Origin: Octopus sinensis
Taxonomy: Eukaryota
Assembly (NCBI RefSeq): GCF_006345805.1
Contig: NC_043013.1
Location: 55,056,001 to 55,120,000, forward strand
Direction of reading: 5' to 3'
Length of the DNA stretch: 64,000 nt
In this document: positions 622 through 59,790 of the stretch, piece by piece
Numbering within the stretch: position 1 is the stretch's first letter
Layout: the number at the start of each line of letters is the position of its first letter
Notes under the pieces: generated by a model
The model's database searches: none
Told to the model about the DNA's origin: nothing
Seen by the model: the letters and a program-made list of their open reading frames with translations, nothing else
Made by a program: the position numbers and the translations under genes

Positions 622-723
622 AGGCACAAGAGTGGCTGTGTGGTAAGTAGCTTGCTTACCAACCACATAGTTCTGGGTTCAGTCTCACTATATGGAGGCT
701 TGGGCCAGTGTCTTCTACTATAT
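622..723 (+). mobile_element. tRNA-derived SINE ('family A'), 5' half, interrupted by PLE insertion
   Basis: GAGTGGCTGTGTGGTAAGTAGCTTGCTTACCAACCACATAGTTCTGGGTTCAGTC head matches full copies at 3587 and 29993. It stops at CTACTATA and resumes at 2469. Confidence 0.8.
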
Positions 724-2716: not shown

Positions 2717-3586
2717 ATTGAACTTGTCTATGACCAAGAAGTTCCCACAGGGAACCTATATTTATTTGTGTTACATACAATATGGTTCACAGGAACACAA
2801 GTAAATGCAGGTGATACACTTTCTAACCTTTTCAAACATGAAAATCAATGTATTTTTAACAGTTCTTTTAACCAGAATTTACCATTAATAACTGAGTAGT
2901 GTATAACCAAGTGGATCCCTATTCAATCAGAATTCTAGAACTCTCTTATATACAGTTCTGATGCAATGGTGGAAATATGGAAAATTCAACACTGGAATCT
3001 ATTGATTATTCACACCATGTACATACGGCTATACTACTAACATATGTGTGTATAACTTTATACATATATGTTTATACATGCAAGTATGTGTGAATGTATC
3101 TATACAAGTGCTATATATACACTTATACAATCCCCTCTCTCTCTACACACACATGCTTGCATACATTACATATACACTTATATACATACTGTATATAAAG
3201 CAGGTGGCCTTTCGAATTCTGAGTGAAGCTATCTTTTTTTCTTTTTCAAATCATGTTTTAAAGATATTTTACTGCTTCTAAATATATTTCTCAAAGCAAA
3301 TTTCTATACCCAGAACTTTTGAAGAAAAATTTATTTTGCAAATATATGCAAGTTCAGTATCATTCCTTTTGCGTGAATTTGTGAAGTGTTCAAAGAAATA
3401 GAGTACAAATGTGGCTGACTTGTGTAACAAGTGCAACTCACTTCTACAAATGCAACTAACTTTTGAGGTAAGTGCAGCTAACTTCTGCAATGAATGCAAC
3501 TGGCTCCTACCAAGTGCAGCTGCATTCTACTGCAATAACTGCGTTTAAAAACGAATCTGTAATCATAATTTTGAAAACAATTAAAA

Positions 3587-4005
3587 GGAGCGGCTGTGTG
3601 GTAAGTCACTTGCTTACCAGCCACATGGTTCCGGCTTCAGTCCCACCTTGTGGCACGTTGGGCAAGTGTCTTCTACTATAGCCTCGGGCCGACCAAAGCC
3701 TTGTGAGTGGATTTGGTAGACGGAAACTGAAAGAAGCCCGTCGTGTATATATAAAGATATATATATATATATATGCATGTATGTGTGTGTGTATGTTTGT
3801 GTGTCTATGTTTGCCCCCCCCCAACATTGCTTGACAACCGATGCTGGTGTGTTTACGTCCCTGTAACTTAGCAGTTCGGCAAAATAGACTGATACAATAA
3901 GTACTAGGCTTACAAAGAATAAGTCCTGGGGTCCATTTCTTCGACTAAAGGCGGTGCTCCAGCATGGCCGCAGTCAAAACCGAAACAAGTAAAAGAGTAT
4001 AAGAG
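3587..4005 (+). mobile_element. Family A tRNA-derived SINE, near full length
   Basis: tRNA-like head, internal (TA)n(TG)n, tail GTAAAAGAG; collinear with 29993-30427. Confidence 0.9.
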
Positions 4006-4083: not shown

Positions 4084-4299
4084 TCTTTTCTACTCTAAGC
4101 ACAAGGCCTGAAATTTTGGTAGGAGTGGTCCAGTCGATTAGGTTGACCCCAGTGCATAACTGGTACTTAATTTATCAACCCCAAAAGGATTAAAGACAAA
4201 GTCGACCTCAGTGGAATTTGAACTCAGAATGTAAAGACAGATGAAATACTGCTAAGCATTTCGCCTGGTGCGCTTACATTTCTGCCAGCTCACTGCCTT
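4084..4299 (-). mobile_element. tRNA-derived SINE ('family B')
   Basis: Reverse complement of GGCAGTGAGCTGGCAGAA...TTCTGAGTTCAAATTCC...GTCGACTTTG...GATAAATTAAGTACCAG; recurs many times in the window. Confidence 0.85.
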
Positions 4300-5950: not shown

Positions 5951-6582
5951 TGTTTTTTTTCTTTTCTGACTTATTCTCATTTCCTTCTTGAACGTTGAAC
6001 CCATCTTTTCCAACCTCCTCATTCATCTCTCCTCACTCTTCCTTCATTGTTATTCTACCACATTCACATGTAATGGTTCAATATTCACTTCAGATCTCTC
6101 TTCACATTCAGTACAGGACATTCTCAAGGATTGTCCTTGACCATGAAAAAAAAAAAAAAAATCCCAGAATTCTTTTCAACTTCATTCCTATCTTTAGCCT
6201 TCCTTCTCAGTTTTTTTTTTCCTCTTTTATCTCTCCTTTGTCATGTGACATCCCAGTATTTCTGTACACTCTCACCTCTGCTTCCTTGCTATTCTACACC
6301 TTTCTTATGATTCTTACCTTCAATTCATCATCTGCTCTCCCATTCATACCAATCCTATTCAGACTCTCAACATTACTCACTGAACAATTTCTATTTTCTC
6401 AGGATATTCTTTTCTTTTTCCTATCTTTCCTGTTCGGTCTCTAAGTTCAAATCTAGGATGCCTTTCTGATTTAACAGGCTCTGGATTTACTGATTTATTT
6501 ATTAACTTATTATTAACTACCTACTCCTCCCAATATCTTAAATCGCAAGACATATTTGTTGCTTATACTGGCCAGGTCCCAT

Positions 6583-7211
6583 TTAACCCTTCAGCACTCA
6601 GAATACTCAGTCAAATGTAATACTCATTCTTTCACATTGTTTTCAAATAATTATGCATTATTTTTTTAAGCTTTGAGATTTCAATGAAGTGATTATTTAT
6701 GTTTTGAAGGATATTATCAAATGGGTGTGAGAGGCCTGATCTGGCCAGTCTTCATATATAAAAGTAAGGTTGTGTGTCTGTCTCCTACGATTTAGATTCC
6801 TAACTACTCTCACATTTTGCGGTGCAGTTTAACCAAAACCGGGTATCTTATAGTCGTGATTCATATCGAGCCCTTCTGGGTATTAGAGTGCATCTACGAT
6901 GAGTCTACGATTTTAAAAATAATTTACCATCATTTTTTTCCATTTTAATGCATTTTGTCGCTATTATATAAGGGAAGTAACTCTCTAAAACTGTCTACAA
7001 TGAGTCAACGTTTTAAAAAAAATTTACCATCATTTGTTTTCCATTTTTAATGCATTTTTTTGCTATTTTTTGCCTATAACTCTCTAAAAATGCTTATATA
7101 GTTATTTCCCTTACAAACCCGAGCAACACCGGGTGATACTGCTAGTTTGCATATAAAACAAAGTAGAACATTTTGGGCCAGATTCGACTGGTTTAAATGC
7201 TAAGGGGTTAA
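6583..7211. mobile_element. piggyBac-type MITE with TTAA TSDs, interrupted by a Helitron
   Basis: TTAA|CCCTTCAGCA ... TGCTAAGGGG|TTAA; uninterrupted relative at 34215-34442. Confidence 0.75.
6749..7145 (+). mobile_element. Non-autonomous Helitron
   Basis: 5' TC(TTCATATATAAAA), 3' hairpin ACCCG-agcaacac-CGGGT (7117-7134) then CTAG (7142-7145), no TSD, internal ~100-bp tandem duplication (6893-6992 / 6993-7092). Confidence 0.75.
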
Positions 7212-9457: not shown

Positions 9458-9670
9458 TCCTTTCTATTGGAAGCACAAGGCCTCAAATTAAGGGGAAGGG
9501 ATTAAGTCGATTACATCGACCCCTGTGCGTAACTGGTACTTATTTAATTGACCCCAAAAGGATGAAAGGTAAAGTCAACCTTGGTGGAATTTGAACTCAG
9601 AACATAGCGAAGCTGAAATGCCACTAAGCATTTCGTCCAGCATGCTAACGATTCTGCTAGCTGGCCACCT
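9458..9670 (-). mobile_element. Family B SINE
   Basis: Same core; (AAT)n on both sides. Confidence 0.85.
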
Positions 9671-20519: not shown

Positions 20520-20690
20520 GAGGCATAAGCATAGGTGTGTAGTTAACAAACTTGCTGCCAACCCATGGTTTTATGTTCCATCTTATTGCATGGCACTTTG
20601 GTGACAAAGTGTCTCCTACTATGACATTGAACTTACCAAAGCTTTGTGAGTAGATTTCATCAATTACAGCTAAAACAAGCCTGTCTTCTG
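20520..20690 (+). mobile_element. Family A SINE, diverged
   Basis: AGGTGTGTAGTTAACAAACTTGCTGCCAACCCATGG...GCTTTGTGAGTAGATTT. Confidence 0.7.
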
Positions 20691-21033: not shown

Positions 21034-21470
21034 GGTGGCAGAATCGTTAGCACATTGGACAAAATGCTTTGCAATATTTCATGTCTTTATACTCTGAGTT
21101 CAAATTCCGCCAAGGTCGACTTTGCCTTTTATCCTTTTAGGGTTGATTAAATAAGTACTAGTTATACCCTGGGGTCGATGTAATTGACTTAATCCCTTTA
21201 TCTGTCCTTGTTTGACCCCTCTGTGTTTAGCCCCCTGCCATCCACCACTGTGGGCAATAAAGAAATAAAAATTGTTAAACACCAGGAAAATGCTTACTGG
21301 CATTTCATGTCTTTATGTTCTGAGTTCAAATTCCACTGAAGCCAATTTTGCCTTCCATCCTTTCAGGGTTGATTAAATAAGTACTAGTTATGCACTGGGG
21401 GGTCAATGTAATTGACTTATCTCCTAACATGAAATTGCTGGCCTTGTGACAAAAATTTGAAGCCAATCAC
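21034..21470 (+). mobile_element. Two tandem family B SINEs
   Basis: Cores at ~21095-21180 and ~21320-21415. Confidence 0.8.
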
Positions 21471-22639: not shown

Positions 22640-22985
22640 ATTGGTTTCCCTAAGTCGATTGTATCAATCCCCGTGCTCAACTGAGGCTTATTTTATTGAT
22701 CTGCAATGGATGAAAGGCAAAATTGACTCAGAATGTAAAAACAGACAAAATGACACCAACCGTTTGTCTGGCATGCAAATGATTCTGCCACCCTAAAACC
22801 ATTCAGCACGTGGCCAGCAATTTTGAGGTGTGGGGGGGGGGCAAATCAATTACATCGACCCCAGTGCTCAGCTGGTACTTAATTCATTGACCTCAGTGGA
22901 ATCTGAAATCAAAATGTAAAGATAAACGAAATTCTGTTATGCAGTTTTCCTGGGGTGCTAAAAATTCAGTTAACTTCCTGCTTTA
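22640..22985 (-). mobile_element. Two tandem family B SINEs (reverse)
   Basis: Reverse cores at ~22690-22790 and ~22850-22980. Confidence 0.7.
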
Positions 22986-29992: not shown

Positions 29993-30157
29993 GACGCAGG
30001 AGTGGCTGTGTGGTAAGTAGCTTGCTTACCAACCACATGGTTCTGGGTTCAGTCCTACTGCATGGCACTTTGGGCAAGTGTCTTCTACTATAGCCTCGGG
30101 CCGACCAAAGCCTTGTGAGTGGATTTGGTAGACGGAAACTGAAAGAAGCCCGTCGTA

Positions 30158-30209
<52 letters not shown>

Positions 30210-33400: not shown

Positions 33401-33579
33401 GCAGATTTGTTTGAATAACTTCAAGAAATACAACCCAAAACATGAGTTTATAATATATAAGATAATATATAAGGAAAATAAAATAATAATAATAATAATA
33501 ATAATGAAAAAGTATATATATATATCCATGTTACTTGCAGTTTTATTCAGAATTGATTTTTAATGTAATCTGTTATTCC

Positions 33580-33620
33580 ACTTACCTGTAAGAAAGAAAG
33601 AAAAGAAAGATGTGTTAGTT
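33580..33620 (-). other. Candidate recursive splice site (ratchet point)
   Basis: Minus strand: AACTAAC-acat-(Y)21-ACAG|GTAAGT. Confidence 0.55.
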
Positions 33621-34214
33621 ACAGCAAATGTTATATTTGAGTTATACAAAAGTGAGATAACTTATTAATTAAACATTTTGTATGAGGAAATCTGTTTCCA
33701 ACAAATATTAAATTTTACGTTATTAAGGCGCTTGGAGACAATTTCAAAGGAAATGTATTCCAGCCAACTTAGAAATAGTTAACAATTGACAGTAAAGAAT
33801 ATTATGTTAAAACATTATGTAAGAAGGAGAGAAAGAGAGAGAGGAAGAGCAGAGGAGAGAAAGCTTTTATTGCAATTCATAAAGGTTGTACCATACCAGA
33901 TAATGCTAAAAAAGGAATTTCAAAAAGGAAATTCAATTAACAGTTAAAATTAATTTTTTGAAAATTTATATAAGCAACAAGACTCTACTTTTATAAAATG
34001 GCTTTCTTCCATTTTGAAAAACACTCTTCAAATATGCAACCACAAAATCTGTAAAGCCTTAACCTTCGGATGTTAGAGAGAATTGAATTCTTGTTGTTTT
34101 CTGCAGATCATCTCTGTTGCAGCAGCAGCAGATTTATGATCAATGGTACTCTATTCATGACCACCCTGCTTTAAAAGCCTACTTTATTTAACCCCTTGAT
34201 ACAAACTTTCACCT

Positions 34215-34442
34215 TTAACCCTTTAACATTCAGATTTTCCTGTCAAATGTTGTGCTTATTAATTCAAAGGGTTTTCAATTAATCCTGCATCATCTCGTAG
34301 CTTCAGGAATTTTATGATGTGATTGTTTATTTTGAGAAGTACATTGTAGGGTAGGTGTGAGAGACTGGATCTGGTTGGTTTGAACAAAAGACAGGTAGAA
34401 TATTTAGGCAGGACATGGTCAGTTTGAATGTTAAATGGTTAA
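34215..34442. mobile_element. piggyBac-type MITE with TTAA TSDs
   Basis: TTAA|CCCTTTAACATT ... AATGTTAAATGG|TTAA; body collinear with 6587-6748 + 7146-7207. Confidence 0.75.
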
Positions 34443-35671
34443 AGTGATCTAAATTCTAACCTCTCACCAAAACTACATGTTAATTTAAGTTACAAACAGT
34501 TTAATAATAAGAAAGTTATTTTAACTAAGTTATTCACTATTTACAAAATTAATTGAGATAAAGCCATGAATATGTCCTTCTTTTTTTAAGATTGCAGAGG
34601 GAGATTTGATTGCTATTTTTGGAAGGTCAGTCAGGTATATATATATATAAACTCTTTCATTGATGTGTGCAATTCATTTGGATTCAAAATGGCTATATAT
34701 TTCACGATTTGGATAATTAAATCCTCTATGCTAACAATACAAATAAAGTGCATACATTTATGAAGTTACAAAGAAAATGTACAATAATTGCATATTGAAG
34801 ATATCAAATATATTTTCATGACTTCACAGGAAATAAAGGAACCCCCGTTTCCTTCAAGTATGGAGCTCATAAAAATGACTTTTAAATAGTGGGTCAGCAT
34901 GCAATAATTTATGATTTCATTAATTAAGTAAATTCATATTAAATAGCTTTTATAAGATTGCATACAAATTGTACTAATTGTTTCACTTACTTCATTAACC
35001 TAATTACTATTTAAAATTCAGAAGCTTTTTTAGCCTTATTACACACTAAATAGATAGAGGTAAATAGAACTGCGAATGAGATATATATTTTATATAAATC
35101 AGTGTTTCACAGTTATAACTGTGTGTGTGTGCATAATTATTAGAATGTCAATAAAACAGGAATCCTAAATAAATAGATAGAGTATCATGTGCACTCATCT
35201 AATATCACTATGAAAGTAGTTCCAGAAGGGACTTTTTGGCAGCTTGGACAAGGACAGAAGTAACTTGTTACTGCTTCTTAACAACTCTTCAAGATTGTCT
35301 TTCTTTCCAAAAATGGGTCAAGCCCAGCTCATTTGCATGATACTACATGGTAGGTGACACATTACGAAATACTTTATGTTTGAATAACTCAATATATTTG
35401 TTTTCCATACATACTTTCATACATTTCTGCCACTTCTTTGAGACAGTTTGGGCCAGTTTGTCCATGTCAGGTTCTGTCAGATGTCTTCAACAATGACCAT
35501 CAAAACTGCTTGTAAACAGGCCTTCAATAAACTGTTTTTGATATATAAGAAATGATACATCTGGGTGATTCAAAATTAGTGATTTCTAAACATTTTAAAT
35601 GTTTAAATATTTAATTAGCTTCATCTTTAGGGAAGAAATATTTTTGATAATCTTTACATTCACACCATATT

Positions 35672-36135
35672 TTGATGCAGATTGGTGAATGCAATTGTCT
35701 TCCCAATAGCAACATATGGATGCGAGACCTGGACACTAAAGAAAGCTGACCAGAAGAGAATTAATGCATTCGAGCTTTGGTGTTGGAGAAGACTTTTACG
35801 GATTCCATGGACAGTGAAGCTCACCAATGGAGAAGTTCTTAACCAGATCAAGCTGAAACTGTCGCTAGAAGCTAGGATCACCAAGCATAGATTGACGTAT
35901 TTTGGTCATATTATGCGGAGAAAATCCCTGGAGAAGGACATCATGCTCAGAATGGTCAGTGGCAAGAGAGGAAGAGGCCGACCAAGAACCCGCTGGCTTG
36001 ACACCATCAAGAGTGATATGGGAATGGACATAGCCAATCTGAAAGAAGCGGCCCAGGATAGAACTGGCTGGAGGACACTGATCCATCGAGTAACTGAGAG
36101 TCGACTTTGACTGAGCGGATAAATAGATAGATAGA
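35672..36135 (+). mobile_element. RTE (BovB-like) LINE 3' fragment with uninterrupted ORF2 C-terminus
   Basis: 142-aa ORF with VFPIATYGCETWTLKKADQKRINAFELWCWRRLLRIPW...YFGHIMRR..LEK.IML..VSGKRGRGRPRTRWLD...AQDR..WR; (ATAG)n tail. Confidence 0.92.
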
Positions 36136-37077: not shown

Positions 37078-37467
37078 TCTTTTACTTGTTTCAGTCATTG
37101 GCCTGTGGCCATACTGGGGCACTGCCTTGAAGAATCTTAATCTAATGAATCGACTCCAGAACTATTTGCTTTCAAGTACTGGTCCATATTCTATTGGTCT
37201 CTTTTGCTGAACCACTAAGTTACAAGGGCATAAACACACCACCATCAATTGTCAAGCGATGGTGGTGGACAAATACAAGGACACACACACACACATACAT
37301 ACACGACTGGCTTCTTCCAGTTTCCGTCTACGAAATCCACTCACAAGGCTTTGGCCAACCTGAGGCTATAGTAGAAGGCACTTCCCCAAGTTGCCACGCA
37401 GTGGGACTGAACCCTGAACTATGAGGTTGGGAAACAAGCTTCTTACTACACACCCATGCATGTGCCT
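37078..37467 (-). mobile_element. Family A SINE (reverse)
   Basis: TTTACTTGTTTCAGTC...TTTCCGTCTACGAAATCCACTCACAAGGCTTTGG...GGGACTGAACCC. Confidence 0.85.
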
Positions 37468-38416: not shown

Positions 38417-39159
38417 TATATGCTGATGTCATGGATATAAAGATATCAAGTGTAATTAATGTGTTCAACATGGCAGATTAATTTTACAAGATATCTGCAA
38501 TGTTCAACATTCTAATTCTGTGCCTACAGTTCTAACAAATAAGACAGTGCATACCTACATGTATGTGTGTGAGTCCGTGTGTGTGTGCGTGTATGTATGT
38601 ATGTATACACATGCATGTATTGCTCATGTATTGCTCATGTATTACTCATGTACATGTATGTCTGTATGCTTGCGTGGGCGTCTGGACTTGTGCATGTGTG
38701 TGTGTGGAAGCAGATTCAAGCAGTGCTGCAGTCATACATTATTCATAAATATTGTTAGAGAAAATATGGATTACTAATTGATGTTGTTAGATTGTGTGGG
38801 TGTGTATATGTGTAGCTGAGTACATACCTATACACATGCACACACACATATATTTATGCTTCCAGTGAGTATGTATGTATGTATGTGTGTATACACCTAC
38901 ATGAATACATATGCACATACTCACACACACATACAAGAATGTAAAAACTGTAAAACTGATACAAGTGCATCTTATACAAGCTGTCAACAAAATCTACTGT
39001 AGAACTCAATACTTGGTTTGGAGTAGGGAAATATGTTTATTATTTCAAAAGTAAACACTTGTTCAATAATCAAACAACAGTTACACAGCCTCAGGTTGAC
39101 CAAATCCTTCTGAGTGGATTTGGTAGATAGAAACTGAAAGAAGCCTGTTGTGTATATAT

Positions 39160-40430
39160 CATCATCATCATCATCATCATTTAGTGTTCATTTCCCATGC
39201 TGTCATATATTGGGCAGTTTGACTCGTATGCTGGATAGCTGCACCAGACTCCAGTCTGGTTTGGCTTGGTTTCTAGGGCTGGATGAACCTTTCTAAATCC
39301 AGCCACCCCACAGAGTATATCAAGAGACTTCTACATGTCACTGACACTGGCCACGACTACAATTTCACTTAGCTTCATGCGTCTTCTCAAGCACAGCAAA
39401 TCACCAATTGTCTAAGCCACTTGCCATTGCCTGCATGGGACTCAACATTGGAACATTATATTTGCCCATTTCACATCTTCCTGAGTCAACCTCAACCACA
39501 GGTTCCCTCAACAAATAGAAATCAACACTTCTTTCTGTTGTTGTCCTCATCCAAACACATCCCATGGCCATACCAGCACAGTCTTCTCTCTTGCACACAA
39601 CAGCTGATGCCCCTTATACTCACCTTTTTCTCTTAAGACACTTACACTCTGTCGTACTTGCACACTGACACTGCACAGCCAGTGGAACACACCAGTTACA
39701 TTGCTTTCAAACCTTTGCATGGCTCTCTACAGTTATAGCCTATGTTTCACTGCCATGCACCATGGCCGTTCACATGCAGGTATCATACAATCTGCCTTTA
39801 CCTCCAAGGGAGAGACACTCTTTGTTATCAACAAAAGTAGCAACAGTGTGAACTTCACCCAGCCTGTTCTTATTCTATCAGCTATGCTTTCAGAGCATCC
39901 TCCTCCACTGCTGACTTGGTCACTGAGCTAACAGAAACTATCTACTACTTCTAAGTATTGCCCTGGGCTTTAGACAAAGTCTATTCCTTTGTACATTCCT
40001 AGTGTTTATTGTGCCTATACACCTGCTACACACAAAGACTACTTTCTCTGTTAACCTCCTGACACGACTGCACTTCTAATGTGTCCATAGCTTGCTCTGG
40101 GTACATCTTATGGAGTTTCTACCTACATCTTTTCTACATAATGAGAAGGGCTATTGCCCTGATGGGATTTGTGATTTCTCTGTTTTCCTACTAGCTAAGA
40201 CTTTGGTCTTTGTTAAATCAACTCTTTGATTCTAGATCTTGCTTCCACACCTGAAACTTCTTCTCTAGTTCTGGTAGTGATTCAGCTATAAGAACATGGT
40301 CATCAGCATAGAGGAGATCCCAAGGGCAGCCCTTCTTAAATTCTCTGTTGTGGCATCTCATATAAACACTGTCAGCACAAAATGGTGACATTTGTTTATG
40401 CCTCTTGTAAACATGTTCCATAGCTCAAAA
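39160..40430 (-). mobile_element. RTE LINE 3' fragment (RT domain to 3' UTR with family C tail)
   Basis: REFKKGCPWDLLYADDHVLIAESLPELEKKFQVWKQDLESK (YADD motif); degenerate C-terminus, then the family C tail ending in (GAT)n. Confidence 0.85.
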
Positions 40431-47689: not shown

Positions 47690-47829
47690 GGACTTGTTTG
47701 TTTACCAGCCACAGGGTTCCTGGTTCAGTCCCACTGGAGAGCACCTCAAGCAAATATCCTTTACTAGAGCCTGAGGCTGATCAAAGCCTTAGAAATGGAT
47801 TTGGTAGCTGGAAACAAAAGGAAACCTGC

Positions 47830-49799: not shown

Positions 49800-49980
49800 A
49801 TTAATTTGCTGGACAAAATGCTTGGTAGCATTTCTCGTGGCTTTATATTCTGAGTTCAAATTTCACTGAGGTCGACTTTCATCCTTTTGGGGTGAACCAA
49901 ATAAGTACCAGTTGTGCACTGGGGTTGATCTAATCGACTTGTCCCCTTCCCCAGAATTTCAGGCCTTGTGTCTATAGTAT
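49800..49980 (+). mobile_element. Family B SINE
   Basis: TTCTGAGTTCAAATTTCACTGAGGTCGACTTTCATCCTTTTGGGG...ATAAGTACCAG. Confidence 0.8.
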
Positions 49981-52704: not shown

Positions 52705-53082
52705 TTGTTTTATTTGTTTCGGTCATCAAACTGCAACCAAGCTGGGGCTCTGACTTAAAGAATTTTCGGTTGAATGAATTGGCCCCAATGCTTTTATTTT
52801 TAAGCCTGGTACTCGTTCTTTGTCAAACCACTATGTTACAGGGATGTAATTAAACCAACATCGATTATCTAGCAGTGGTGGGGGACAAACATAGACACCC
52901 ACACATAGATATATAATATATATGATGGGCTTCTTTTAGTTTCCGTCTACCAAATCCACTCACAAGGATTTGGTTGGCCCAAGTCTATAGTAAAAGACAC
53001 CTGCTCAAGATGCCACATAGTGGGACTGAACCTGGAGCTATGTGGTTGTGAAGCAAACTTCTTACCAGACAGCCACACTTGC
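52705..53082 (-). mobile_element. Family A SINE (reverse)
   Basis: TTTCCGTCTACCAAATCCACTCACAAGG...GGGACTGAACC...CTTACCAGACAGCCAC. Confidence 0.85.
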
Positions 53083-55265: not shown

Positions 55266-55645
55266 TCATCATCATCATCGTTGTCGTCATTTAACATCTG
55301 CTTTCCATGCTGGCATGGGTTGGATGGTTTGACTGGGCTGGCACACTAGAAGGCTACACCAGACTTCAGTCTGATTTGGCATGGTTTTCTATGGCTGGAT
55401 GCCCTTCCTAATGCTAACCACTTTGAGAGTGTAACTGGTGCTTTTATGTGCCACCAGCACAGGTGTCATTTGTGTGACACCAGTATCTGCCACGACTGCA
55501 ATTTTGCTCAGCTTAATGGGTTTTCTTCTCAAGCGCAACATAATGCCAAAGGTCTTGGCCTTTGCTTCCATGAGGCCCAACACTCGAAAGGACCTCAGCC
55601 ACTCTGCCTCCATGAGGCCCAATGCTTGAAATGAACTCAGCCACC
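55266..55645 (-). mobile_element. Family C / RTE 3' UTR copy with internal ~43-bp duplication
   Basis: (CAT)n...CTTTCCATGCTGGCATGGGTTGGATGG...GGCTGGATGCCCTTCCTAATG; CCATGAGGCCCAA repeated at ~5557x and ~5561x. Confidence 0.8.
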
Positions 55646-59639: not shown

Positions 59640-59790
59640 ATGGGCTTCTTTCAGTTTCTCTTCACCAAATCCATTAACAAGGCTTTGGTCAATTCAGGGC
59701 TATAGTAGAAAATACTTGCCTAAAGTGCCATGCAGTGGAATTGAACATGAAAACACATGACTGGAAAGCAAACTTCTTAAGCACACGCCA
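59640..59790 (-). mobile_element. Family A SINE 5' part (reverse)
   Basis: CTTCTTTCAGTTTCTC...CAAATCCATTAACAAGGCTTTGG...GCAGTGGAATTGAAC. Confidence 0.75.

What the first reader, a model, noticed from the sequence alone, without database searches (positions are those of the whole stretch)
33535..33620. Textbook recursive splice site with an all-frame-stop RS-exon (minus strand)
Seen, minus strand: branch-point AACTAAC (33620-33614, branch A 29 nt from the junction), 21 uninterrupted pyrimidines (33610-33590), ACAG, immediately followed by a perfect GTAAGT (33585-33580). A second donor CAA|GTAACA 51 nt downstream defines 33585-33535, which has stops in all three frames. Established: AG|GTAAGT ratchet points with downstream cryptic RS-exons subdivide very long introns in Drosophila and vertebrates. 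Inference: the window lies in a giant minus-strand intron processed recursively; I know of no characterisation of recursive splicing in cephalopods. Caveats: the Y-tract resembles a (CTTT)n microsatellite, and the site could be an ordinary acceptor of a terminal or UTR exon.
Basis: partly seen in the sequence, partly recalled or inferred. Interest (0 to 1): 0.7.

Follow-up and report, generated by a model that had tools for sequence, protein, structure and literature searches.

The report
Candidate recursive splice site in octopus
A near-perfect back-to-back acceptor and donor splice signal sits on the minus strand of this octopus DNA, exactly like the "ratchet points" that fruit flies use to remove giant introns in steps, but nothing available here can show that it lies inside a gene or is ever used.

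Summary
It has AACTAAC, then 21 pyrimidines, then ACAG|GTAAGT. A 51-nt stretch with stops in all frames follows, ending at a weak CAA|GTAACA donor.

The composite site scores 21/21 on a simple ratchet-point consensus. The next best site in the 128 kb of both strands scores 16. Pairing acceptor-like and donor-like halves from this window at random predicts about 0.0016 such sites per window. That is rare locally, but it means tens of chance copies in a 2.3-2.8 Gb octopus genome.

The second donor, the stops in all three frames and a nearby AATAAA are each common by chance, so they add little.

Shared SINE copies (96% identical) at an Octopus bimaculoides locus show that the window is octopus DNA.

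I found no minus-strand exon, no strand asymmetry and no orthologous sequence. RNA data cannot be reached with these tools. The site meets every sequence-level criterion of a ratchet point. The defining functional criteria (sense long intron, conservation, junction or lariat reads) are untested.

My estimates are about 0.42 for a real recursive site, about 0.40 for a chance motif and about 0.10 for an ordinary exon boundary. If real, it is a new member of a known kind, of modest interest.

The parts
33614..33620 (-). Branch-point-like heptamer AACTAAC (branch A at 33615, 29 nt upstream of the AG)
   Evidence: Read directly. CTAAC lies in the -15..-45 window of only 4 of 158 acceptor-like sites in the window.
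33588..33660 (-). AG-free (AG-exclusion) zone upstream of the acceptor AG
   Evidence: The previous AG is 75 nt upstream. This gap is in the top 2.2% of AG-to-AG gaps in the window.
33590..33610 (-). Run of 21 pyrimidines, TCTTTCTTTTCTTTCTTTCTT, with a (TTTC)3 core
   Evidence: It is one of 19 pyrimidine runs of at least 18 nt in the window (both strands). Tandem Repeats Finder does not call it.
33586..33589 (-). Acceptor ACAG (the junction follows G33586)
33580..33585 (-). Ratchet-point donor GTAAGT. With the preceding CAG it matches CAG|GTAAGT 9/9
   Evidence: It is the only CAGGTAAGT in the window on either strand.
33535..33585 (-). Putative 51-nt cryptic RS-exon, with stops in all three frames
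   Evidence: The length matches the roughly 50-nt cryptic RS-exons of Drosophila (PMC8605326). However, 24% of random 51-mers in the window also have stops in all frames.
33529..33534 (-). Weak downstream donor CAA|GTAACA (6/9 match to the consensus)
   Evidence: It is the only plausible GT within about 140 nt downstream. A GTAA 30-100 nt downstream occurs at 28% of random positions.
33541..33546 (-). AATAAA hexamer 40 nt downstream of the acceptor; relevant only to the rival 'cryptic last exon' reading
   Evidence: Read. There are 213 AATAAA in the window on both strands, with no strand bias.
34213..34444 (.). Context: a 232-bp MITE-like element with 20-nt terminal inverted repeats, about 600 nt upstream of the site in the minus sense
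   Evidence: A diverged partial copy lies at about 6582-6760.
35676..36107 (+). Context: 3' fragment of an RTE-type LINE ORF (the C-terminal end of the reverse-transcriptase protein)
   Evidence: Full-length relatives of about 1000 aa carry the endonuclease PF03372 and the reverse transcriptase PF00078.

Best explanation
The site is a composite 3'/5' splice site (a ratchet point) on the minus strand of octopus DNA.

Proposed mechanism, if a long minus-strand intron is transcribed through it:
1. U2AF and U2 recognise the CTAAC branch site, the 21-nt pyrimidine tract and the CAG. The weak GTAACA donor 51 nt downstream may help by exon definition.
2. The upstream exon is ligated to G33585.
3. That ligation regenerates a perfect GTAAGT donor at the new junction. 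It out-competes the weak GTAACA donor.
4. The 51-nt stop-filled stretch and the rest of the intron are removed in a second step. Nothing is left in the mRNA.

Shown: the sequence anatomy and its rarity within this window. Inferred: transcription in the minus sense, location in a long intron, and actual use.
For: - All elements are present exactly as described.
- The consensus score is 21/21, against 16 for the next best of 322 AG|GT sites.
- The expected number of such composites from this window's own half-site frequencies is 0.0016. With a branch motif required it is 0.0002-0.0005.
- Dinucleotide shuffles give 0.04 sites with a tract of at least 16/20 pyrimidines, and none in 300 shuffles at 18/20 or more.
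- The AG-free zone of 75 nt is in the top 2.2%.
- The ratchet-point donor matches 9/9 and the downstream donor 6/9. The cryptic exon is 51 nt. This matches the published Drosophila architecture: an RS-exon of about 50 nt and a ratchet-point donor stronger than the RS-exon donor (PMC8605326).
- Ratchet-point motifs are 4- to 22-fold enriched on the sense strand of large introns in all five invertebrates examined, including sea urchin (PMC2773006). The mechanism is therefore plausibly ancestral.
- Octopus expresses long neuronal genes (PMC7222433).
- The site is not part of a repeat family within the window.
Against: - No host gene was found. No minus-strand ORF matches any Pfam family, and there is no strand asymmetry in AATAAA, GTAAGT or acceptor-like sites.
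- A 64-kb stretch without exons is a priori more likely intergenic. The median octopus intron is 2.5 kb and there are 8.4 genes per Mb.
- Extrapolating 0.0016 per window to 2.3-2.8 Gb gives roughly 60-70 equally good chance sites per genome, or about 10-20 if a branch motif is also required.
- The pyrimidine tract is microsatellite-like, and three long pyrimidine runs lie within 1.3 kb on this strand.
- The downstream donor lacks G at -1 and at +5, and is no better than chance provides.
- Vertebrate genomes, which octopus resembles in size and repeat load, show almost no ratchet-point enrichment.
- No conservation or RNA evidence could be obtained.
Confidence: 0.42

Rival explanations
1. Chance motif. 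A microsatellite-like (CTTT)n pyrimidine run happens to abut a fortuitous CAGGTAAGT in DNA that is intergenic, antisense to a gene, or simply never used by the spliceosome.
For: - The window has 19 pyrimidine runs of at least 18 nt, 7 strong acceptor-like sites and 30 GTAAGT hexamers.
- The joint expectation of 0.0016 per window scales to tens of sites in a 2.3-2.8 Gb genome.
- No exon, host gene or strand asymmetry was detected.
- The all-frame stops (24%), the downstream GTAA (28%) and the AATAAA (213 copies) are background features.
- The region is the most AT-rich of the window (GC 0.254), with flanking (ATT)n and (CA)n microsatellites.
Against: - It is the single outlier of 322 AG|GT sites, scoring 21/21 against 16 for the next best.
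- It also has a CTAAC branch motif at -29 and a 75-nt AG-free zone, which a pure chance site need not have.
- If octopus uses ratchet points as other invertebrates appear to, real sites would outnumber chance sites of this quality.
Confidence: 0.4
2. Ordinary, non-recursive exon boundary of an unannotated transcript. It could be the acceptor of a 51-nt poison or UTR cassette exon ending at GTAACA. It could be the acceptor of a short cryptic last exon using the AATAAA 40 nt downstream. Or it could be only the donor of a non-coding first or UTR exon that ends in ...ACAG.
For: - The acceptor features are excellent.
- There is one downstream donor at +52, and 51 nt is a multiple of three.
- AATAAA at 33546-33541 is followed by T-rich sequence.
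- Cryptic last exons in long introns are a described class (PMC7997972, listed).
- Mammals have thousands of expressed exons that begin with a donor-like sequence (PMC8605326).
Against: - The GTAACA donor matches only 6/9, and it would have to beat a perfect GTAAGT regenerated at the exon start.
- AATAAA is not enriched here.
- No coding potential and no evidence of any transcript were found.
Confidence: 0.1
3. The signal belongs to the plus strand or to a mobile element. Examples are a U1 snRNA-like sequence (the plus strand reads ACTTACCTG, the U1 5' end) or a splice-site-bearing transposon fragment.
For: The plus-strand complement of CAGGTAAGT is by definition identical to the U1 5' end. 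The region lies between a MITE and microsatellites.
Against: Rfam finds no U1 or any other family in the window, and ARAGORN finds no tRNA. The 33535-33620 block has no second copy in the window and no match in metagenome contigs.
Confidence: 0.03

Closest known systems
Drosophila intronic ratchet points with cryptic RS-exons (Ubx, kuz, Bx and others; Burnette 2005, Duff 2015, Joseph 2018, Joseph & Lai 2021)
   Same: The consensus is the same, (Y)nNCAG|GTAAGT. A cryptic, non-coding exon of about 50 nt ends at a second donor that is weaker than the ratchet-point donor (PMC8605326; PMC2773006).
   Different: Fly sites are defined by RNA intermediates, by location in the longest introns (over 10-40 kb) and by ultraconservation. 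None of these is shown here. The 51-nt length is a multiple of 3, whereas fly cryptic RS-exons are described as generally out of frame. The host is an octopus, where the process has not been described.
Vertebrate RS-exons in long neuronal genes (Sibley 2015; Blazquez 2018), as summarised in PMC8605326
   Same: An acceptor is immediately followed by a reconstituted donor. A downstream donor provides exon definition. The stop-containing exon would be harmful if included. The genome is large, repeat-rich and has long genes.
   Different: Only a few fully suppressed intronic sites are established in mammals. Vertebrate long introns show almost no motif enrichment, with sense/antisense ratios of 0.9-1.5. 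By that analogy a lone motif is weak evidence.
'Zero-length exon' / pseudo-exon of rat tropomyosin (Grellscheid & Smith 2006, cited in PMC2773006)
   Same: A 3' splice site is directly followed by a 5' splice site inside an intron.
   Different: That case is thought to be a regulatory or NMD-linked alternative exon, not a device for subdividing a long intron. No transcript is known here.
Cryptic last exons / intronic polyadenylation sites in long introns (SFPQ-repressed CLEs, PMC7997972)
   Same: A strong intronic acceptor is followed closely by AATAAA.
   Different: AATAAA is at background frequency here. A perfect donor directly at the acceptor is not a feature of that class.

Membership tests
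Recursive splice site (intronic ratchet point) | [quoted passage not shown] | tested here: met
   ACAG|GTAAGT is preceded by 21 pyrimidines. The site scores 21/21 on the consensus and the next best scores 16. The in-window chance expectation is 0.0016.
Recursive splice site (intronic ratchet point) | Usable branch point and AG-exclusion zone upstream of the acceptor | tested here: met
   CTAAC has its branch A 29 nt upstream. The AG-free zone is 75 nt, in the top 2.2%. This is sequence-level evidence only.
Recursive splice site (intronic ratchet point) | Cryptic RS-exon of about 50 nt, ended by a downstream donor weaker than the ratchet-point donor | tested here: met
   The exon is 51 nt. The downstream donor CAA|GTAACA matches 6/9 against 9/9 for the ratchet-point donor. 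The criterion comes from PMC8605326. It is weakly informative, because a GTAA occurs 30-100 nt downstream of 28% of random positions.
Recursive splice site (intronic ratchet point) | Lies on the sense strand of a long intron (over 10-40 kb) of an expressed gene | tested here: inconclusive
   No Pfam match in the 144 scanned minus-strand ORFs of at least 42 aa between positions 1 and about 56,000 (19 ORFs beyond that were not scanned). None of 20 window ORFs is in the protein collection. No strand asymmetry was found.
Recursive splice site (intronic ratchet point) | Strong evolutionary conservation of the acceptor|donor block against poorly conserved flanks | not testable with these tools
   There is no DNA search of cephalopod genomes. 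The only octopus locus retrieved (L002) is unrelated. A metagenome scan found nothing.
Recursive splice site (intronic ratchet point) | RNA evidence: ratchet junction reads, saw-tooth nascent-RNA profile, lariats | not testable with these tools
   No RNA-seq access. The criteria are those of PMC6110457.
Recursive splice site (intronic ratchet point) | Genome-wide sense-strand enrichment of the motif in long introns of the species | not testable with these tools
   Only 25 kb of annotated O. bimaculoides DNA could be fetched. The published ratios cover insects, sea urchin and vertebrates only.
Simple-sequence repeat (CTTT)n with a fortuitous flank | The tract is a tandem repeat array | tested here: inconclusive
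   The exact core is (TTTC)3, in an imperfect array of about 5 units. It falls below the Tandem Repeats Finder threshold.
U1 snRNA gene or pseudogene (plus strand) | Match to the U1 covariance model | tested here: not met
   There are no Rfam matches at gathering threshold anywhere in the window.
Cryptic last exon / intronic poly(A) site | Acceptor followed by a functional poly(A) signal | tested here: inconclusive
   AATAAA lies 40 nt downstream, but the hexamer occurs 213 times in the window. No 3'-end data are available.

The most novel reading that the evidence does not exclude
The site is a working ratchet point in a giant (over 64 kb) minus-strand intron of an octopus gene. It would be the first recursive splice site described in a lophotrochozoan. 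It would imply that fly-type stepwise removal of long introns, with cryptic RS-exons, is ancestral to bilaterians and is used in the very long (often neuronal) genes of cephalopods.
Probability: 0.4. Interest if true: 0.5.

Novelty: new member of a known kind. Interest (0 to 1): 0.3.

Why it matters
Recursive splicing has been shown experimentally in Drosophila and in a few vertebrate genes. Motif enrichment suggests it also occurs in other insects and in sea urchin. I found no paper on it in octopus or any cephalopod.

Octopuses have large, repeat-rich genomes and long neuronal genes. They are therefore a natural test of two alternatives. Either ratchet points are an ancestral answer to long introns, or large genomes abandon them as vertebrates largely did.

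One motif cannot answer that. It does give a concrete coordinate to check in existing octopus RNA-seq, and a template for a genome-wide sense/antisense count.

Tried and rejected
1. **Host gene by homology.** I scanned 144 of the 163 minus-strand stop-to-stop ORFs of at least 42 aa (those between positions 1 and about 56,000) against Pfam and got 0 families.
2. **Exact look-up of window ORFs.** I looked up 20 window ORFs, hoping to reach the window's own annotation or Logan contigs. None is on record.
3. **Non-coding RNA reading.** Rfam and ARAGORN gave no matches, so there is no U1 gene on the plus strand.
4. **Repeat origin.** The 33535-33620 block has no other copy in the window. A 25-mer across the junction has no match in metagenome contigs.
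5. **Annotated cephalopod loci via the RTE LINE ORF.** Neither the plain query nor the X-padded query returned a cephalopod protein. The closest hit is an unnamed Logan contig from run ERR11630394.
6. **SINE-derived peptide.** Padded to 300 aa, it returned one Octopus bimaculoides protein and a 25-kb locus. That settles the organism, but 25 kb is far too little DNA for a sense/antisense motif count.
7. **Strand-of-transcription proxies.** Base skews, AATAAA, GTAAGT, acceptor-like sites and SINE orientation (7 plus, 3 minus) all lie within noise.
8. **Literature search for the SINE sequence.** No hits.
9. **Papers not held.** Duff 2015 and Albertin 2015 are not in the library.

Full report
**Observation.**
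On the minus strand the sequence reads ...GCTGTAACTAACACA TCTTTCTTTTCTTTCTTTCTT ACAG|GTAAGTGGAATAACAG...CTGCAA|GTAACATGG. A script confirmed each coordinate:
- AACTAAC at 33620-33614, with the branch A at 33615, 29 nt from G33586.
- 21 uninterrupted pyrimidines at 33610-33590.
- ACAG at 33589-33586 and GTAAGT at 33585-33580.
- A 51-nt stretch, 33585-33535, with stops in all three frames, followed by GTAACA.

I add three features. The acceptor AG is preceded by a 75-nt AG-free zone, in the top 2.2% of AG-to-AG gaps in the window. GTAACA at +52 is the only plausible donor within about 140 nt downstream. An AATAAA lies at 33546-33541.

**Is it more than chance?**
- The window has 7 AG|GTRAGT sites on both strands, against 3.8 +/- 1.8 in dinucleotide shuffles. 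Only this one has a pyrimidine tract, 19 of 20.
- I scored sites on a 21-point ratchet-point consensus: 16 pyrimidines at -20..-5, Y at -3, and R-A-G-T at +3..+6. This site scores 21. The best of the other 321 AG|GT sites scores 16.
- Shuffling destroys the microsatellite structure of this genome, so I also used a decoupled empirical null. The window holds 7 strong acceptor-like sites (at least 18/20 pyrimidines plus YAG) and 30 GTAAGT hexamers in 128,000 strand positions. That gives 0.0016 expected composites per window, or 0.0002-0.0005 if a CTRAY/CTAAC branch motif is also required.
- The composite is therefore a genuine outlier locally. Octopus genomes are 2.3-2.8 Gb (PMC10700109), so the same rate predicts roughly 60-70 equally good chance sites per genome, or about 10-20 with a branch motif.
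- The supporting details add little. In this window 24% of random 51-mers have stops in all frames. A GTAA or GTRA lies 30-100 nt downstream of 28-43% of random positions. AATAAA occurs 213 times with no strand bias.
- The tract has a (TTTC)3 core and looks microsatellite-derived, but Tandem Repeats Finder does not call it. Three long pyrimidine runs lie within 1.3 kb on this strand.

**What surrounds it, and whose DNA is it?**
- The window is 33% GC and packed with microsatellites (110 Tandem Repeats Finder rows).
- It carries ten copies or fragments of one SINE.
- It carries a 232-bp MITE with 20-nt inverted ends at 34213-34444.
- It carries RTE-type LINE fragments at 35676-36107 on the plus strand, and pieces with a YADD motif (typical of reverse transcriptases; read by eye in the translation, no domain match at E<=0.01) at 39.7-40.4 kb on the minus strand.
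- A peptide derived from the SINE found one named relative in 5.8 billion proteins, an uncharacterised Octopus bimaculoides protein. Its genomic locus, on GCA_001194135.2 chromosome CM046609.1, holds SINE copies 96% and 94% identical to the window's, plus two other shared repeat families.
- Published statements agree with this picture: SINEs dominate octopus repeats, and RTE LINEs are present (PMC9068888, PMC9115989).
- The candidate site itself is single-copy within the window. It is not a U1 or any other Rfam family on either strand.

**Host gene.**
This is the crux, and I could not settle it.
- The 144 minus-strand stop-to-stop ORFs of at least 42 aa between positions 1 and about 56,000 that I scanned match no Pfam family at E<=0.01; 19 further ORFs beyond that were not scanned.
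- Twenty ORFs looked up exactly are not in the protein collection.
- Proxies for the transcribed strand are uninformative. AATAAA is 108 against 105, GTAAGT 17 against 13, and strong acceptors 3 against 4.
- Base skews on the plus strand (AT +0.016, GC -0.023) point the way mammalian introns would for minus-strand transcription. They are well within the scatter of 2-kb windows.
- SINE orientation is 7 plus to 3 minus, which is not significant.
- O. vulgaris has a median intron of 2.5 kb, a median gene of 20 kb and 8.4 genes per Mb. A 64-kb stretch with no visible exon is therefore a priori more likely intergenic than one giant intron. My exon detection would, however, miss short exons.

**Mechanism if real.**
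The anatomy fits the exon-definition model of recursive splicing (PMC8605326; PMC6110457).
1. The acceptor (CTAAC branch, pyrimidine tract, CAG) is recognised together with the weak downstream donor.
2. The upstream exon is joined to G33585.
3. The regenerated perfect GTAAGT (9/9 to CAG|GTAAGT) out-competes GTAACA (6/9).
4. The 51-nt stop-filled exon is removed with the remaining intron.

In Drosophila, mutating the ratchet-point donor forces inclusion of the cryptic exon. The same experiment is the obvious functional test here. The sequence is shown; every step of use is inferred.

**Comparison with what is known.**
- The site matches the (Y)nNCAG|GTAAGT consensus of Drosophila ratchet points and their cryptic RS-exons of about 50 nt.
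- The defining criteria of that family are location in the longest introns, ultraconservation, and junction, saw-tooth or lariat evidence. These are untested here, so I do not file the site as a member, only as a candidate.
- Shepard et al. found ratchet-point motifs enriched 4- to 22-fold on the sense strand of large introns in four insects and a sea urchin. The ratio was only 0.9-1.5 in eight vertebrates, against a background of about 0.07-0.12 per 100 kb (PMC2773006). Which pattern octopus follows is unknown, and it largely decides the posterior.
- If octopus is invertebrate-like, real sites of this quality would far outnumber chance ones. If it is vertebrate-like, chance and real sites are comparable.
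- I combined an even prior on these two scenarios, a low prior for 'sense strand of a giant intron', and a modest likelihood boost from the branch motif and the AG-free zone. That gives about 0.42 for a functional recursive site, about 0.40 for a chance motif, about 0.10 for an ordinary alternative or terminal exon boundary, and a few per cent for anything else.

**Novelty and interest.**
The held library has no paper on recursive splicing in octopus or cephalopods. The single co-occurrence of the two terms is in a reference list. If confirmed, this would be a first example in a lophotrochozoan. It would still be a new member of a well-described kind, in a lineage where the mechanism is expected rather than surprising. 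A single uncorroborated motif warrants modest interest. Its value is as a precise coordinate to test in existing octopus RNA-seq and genome alignments.

Noticed in passing
window 627-722, 2469-2520, 3586-3744, 20536-20657, 29996-30158, 39087-39151, 47698-47826 (+); 37303-37456, 52920-53082, 59642-59790 (-): Ten copies or fragments of one SINE family, usually followed by (TA)n/(TG)n microsatellites. The best copies are 96% identical to SINEs in an Octopus bimaculoides locus (L002). The SINE itself contains a GGTAAGT donor-like string, so it contributes to the window's GTAAGT count. Several copies keep open reading frames in more than one frame.
   Followed up: partly
window 34213-34444; partial copy about 6582-6760: A 232-bp MITE-like element with 20-nt terminal inverted repeats (CTTTAACCCTTTAACATTCA / TGAATGTTAAATGGTTAAAG, 95% complementary). 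A diverged partial copy lies elsewhere in the window.
   Followed up: partly
window 35676-36107 (+); 39736-39927 and 40221-40424 (-): A 5'-truncated RTE-type LINE. Its C-terminal ORF is 83% identical to an ORF on a Logan contig from run ERR11630394. It is 62-68% identical to frog and mite copies and 55-59% identical to lizard and gar copies, a spread across distant animals that resembles the RTE-BovB LINE family named for squid in PMC9068888. A separate degenerate reverse-transcriptase fragment with a YADD motif lies on the minus strand.
   Followed up: partly
window 21100-21320, 21326-21419, 49856-49948 (+); 4132-4221, 9496-9594, 22843-22887 (-): Another short interspersed repeat family, about 90-100 nt, with 74-87% identity between copies. 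Two copies are adjacent in tandem at 21.1-21.4 kb.
   Followed up: no
window 55357-55618 and 1635-1821 versus L002 4444-4704 and 7738-7925: Two further repeat families are shared with the O. bimaculoides locus at 82-85% identity. The first contains a 42-bp tandem duplication at 55563-55644.
   Followed up: no
L002 10001-15284 (O. bimaculoides LOC106867260): The annotated 358-aa 'uncharacterized protein' contains a SINE-derived segment (...HLPKVPCSGTEPGTMWLVSKLLTTQPLL...). It looks like a repeat-derived or doubtful gene model. The locus also has a 1.8-kb run of N.
   Followed up: partly
window 33849-33821, 33610-33590, 32572-32551 (-): Three long pyrimidine runs (29, 21 and 22 nt) lie within 1.3 kb on the minus strand, in the most AT-rich part of the window (GC 0.254 for 32-34 kb). 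The first ends ...CTTCTTACAT and so resembles the ...TTTCTTACAG of the candidate site.
   Followed up: no
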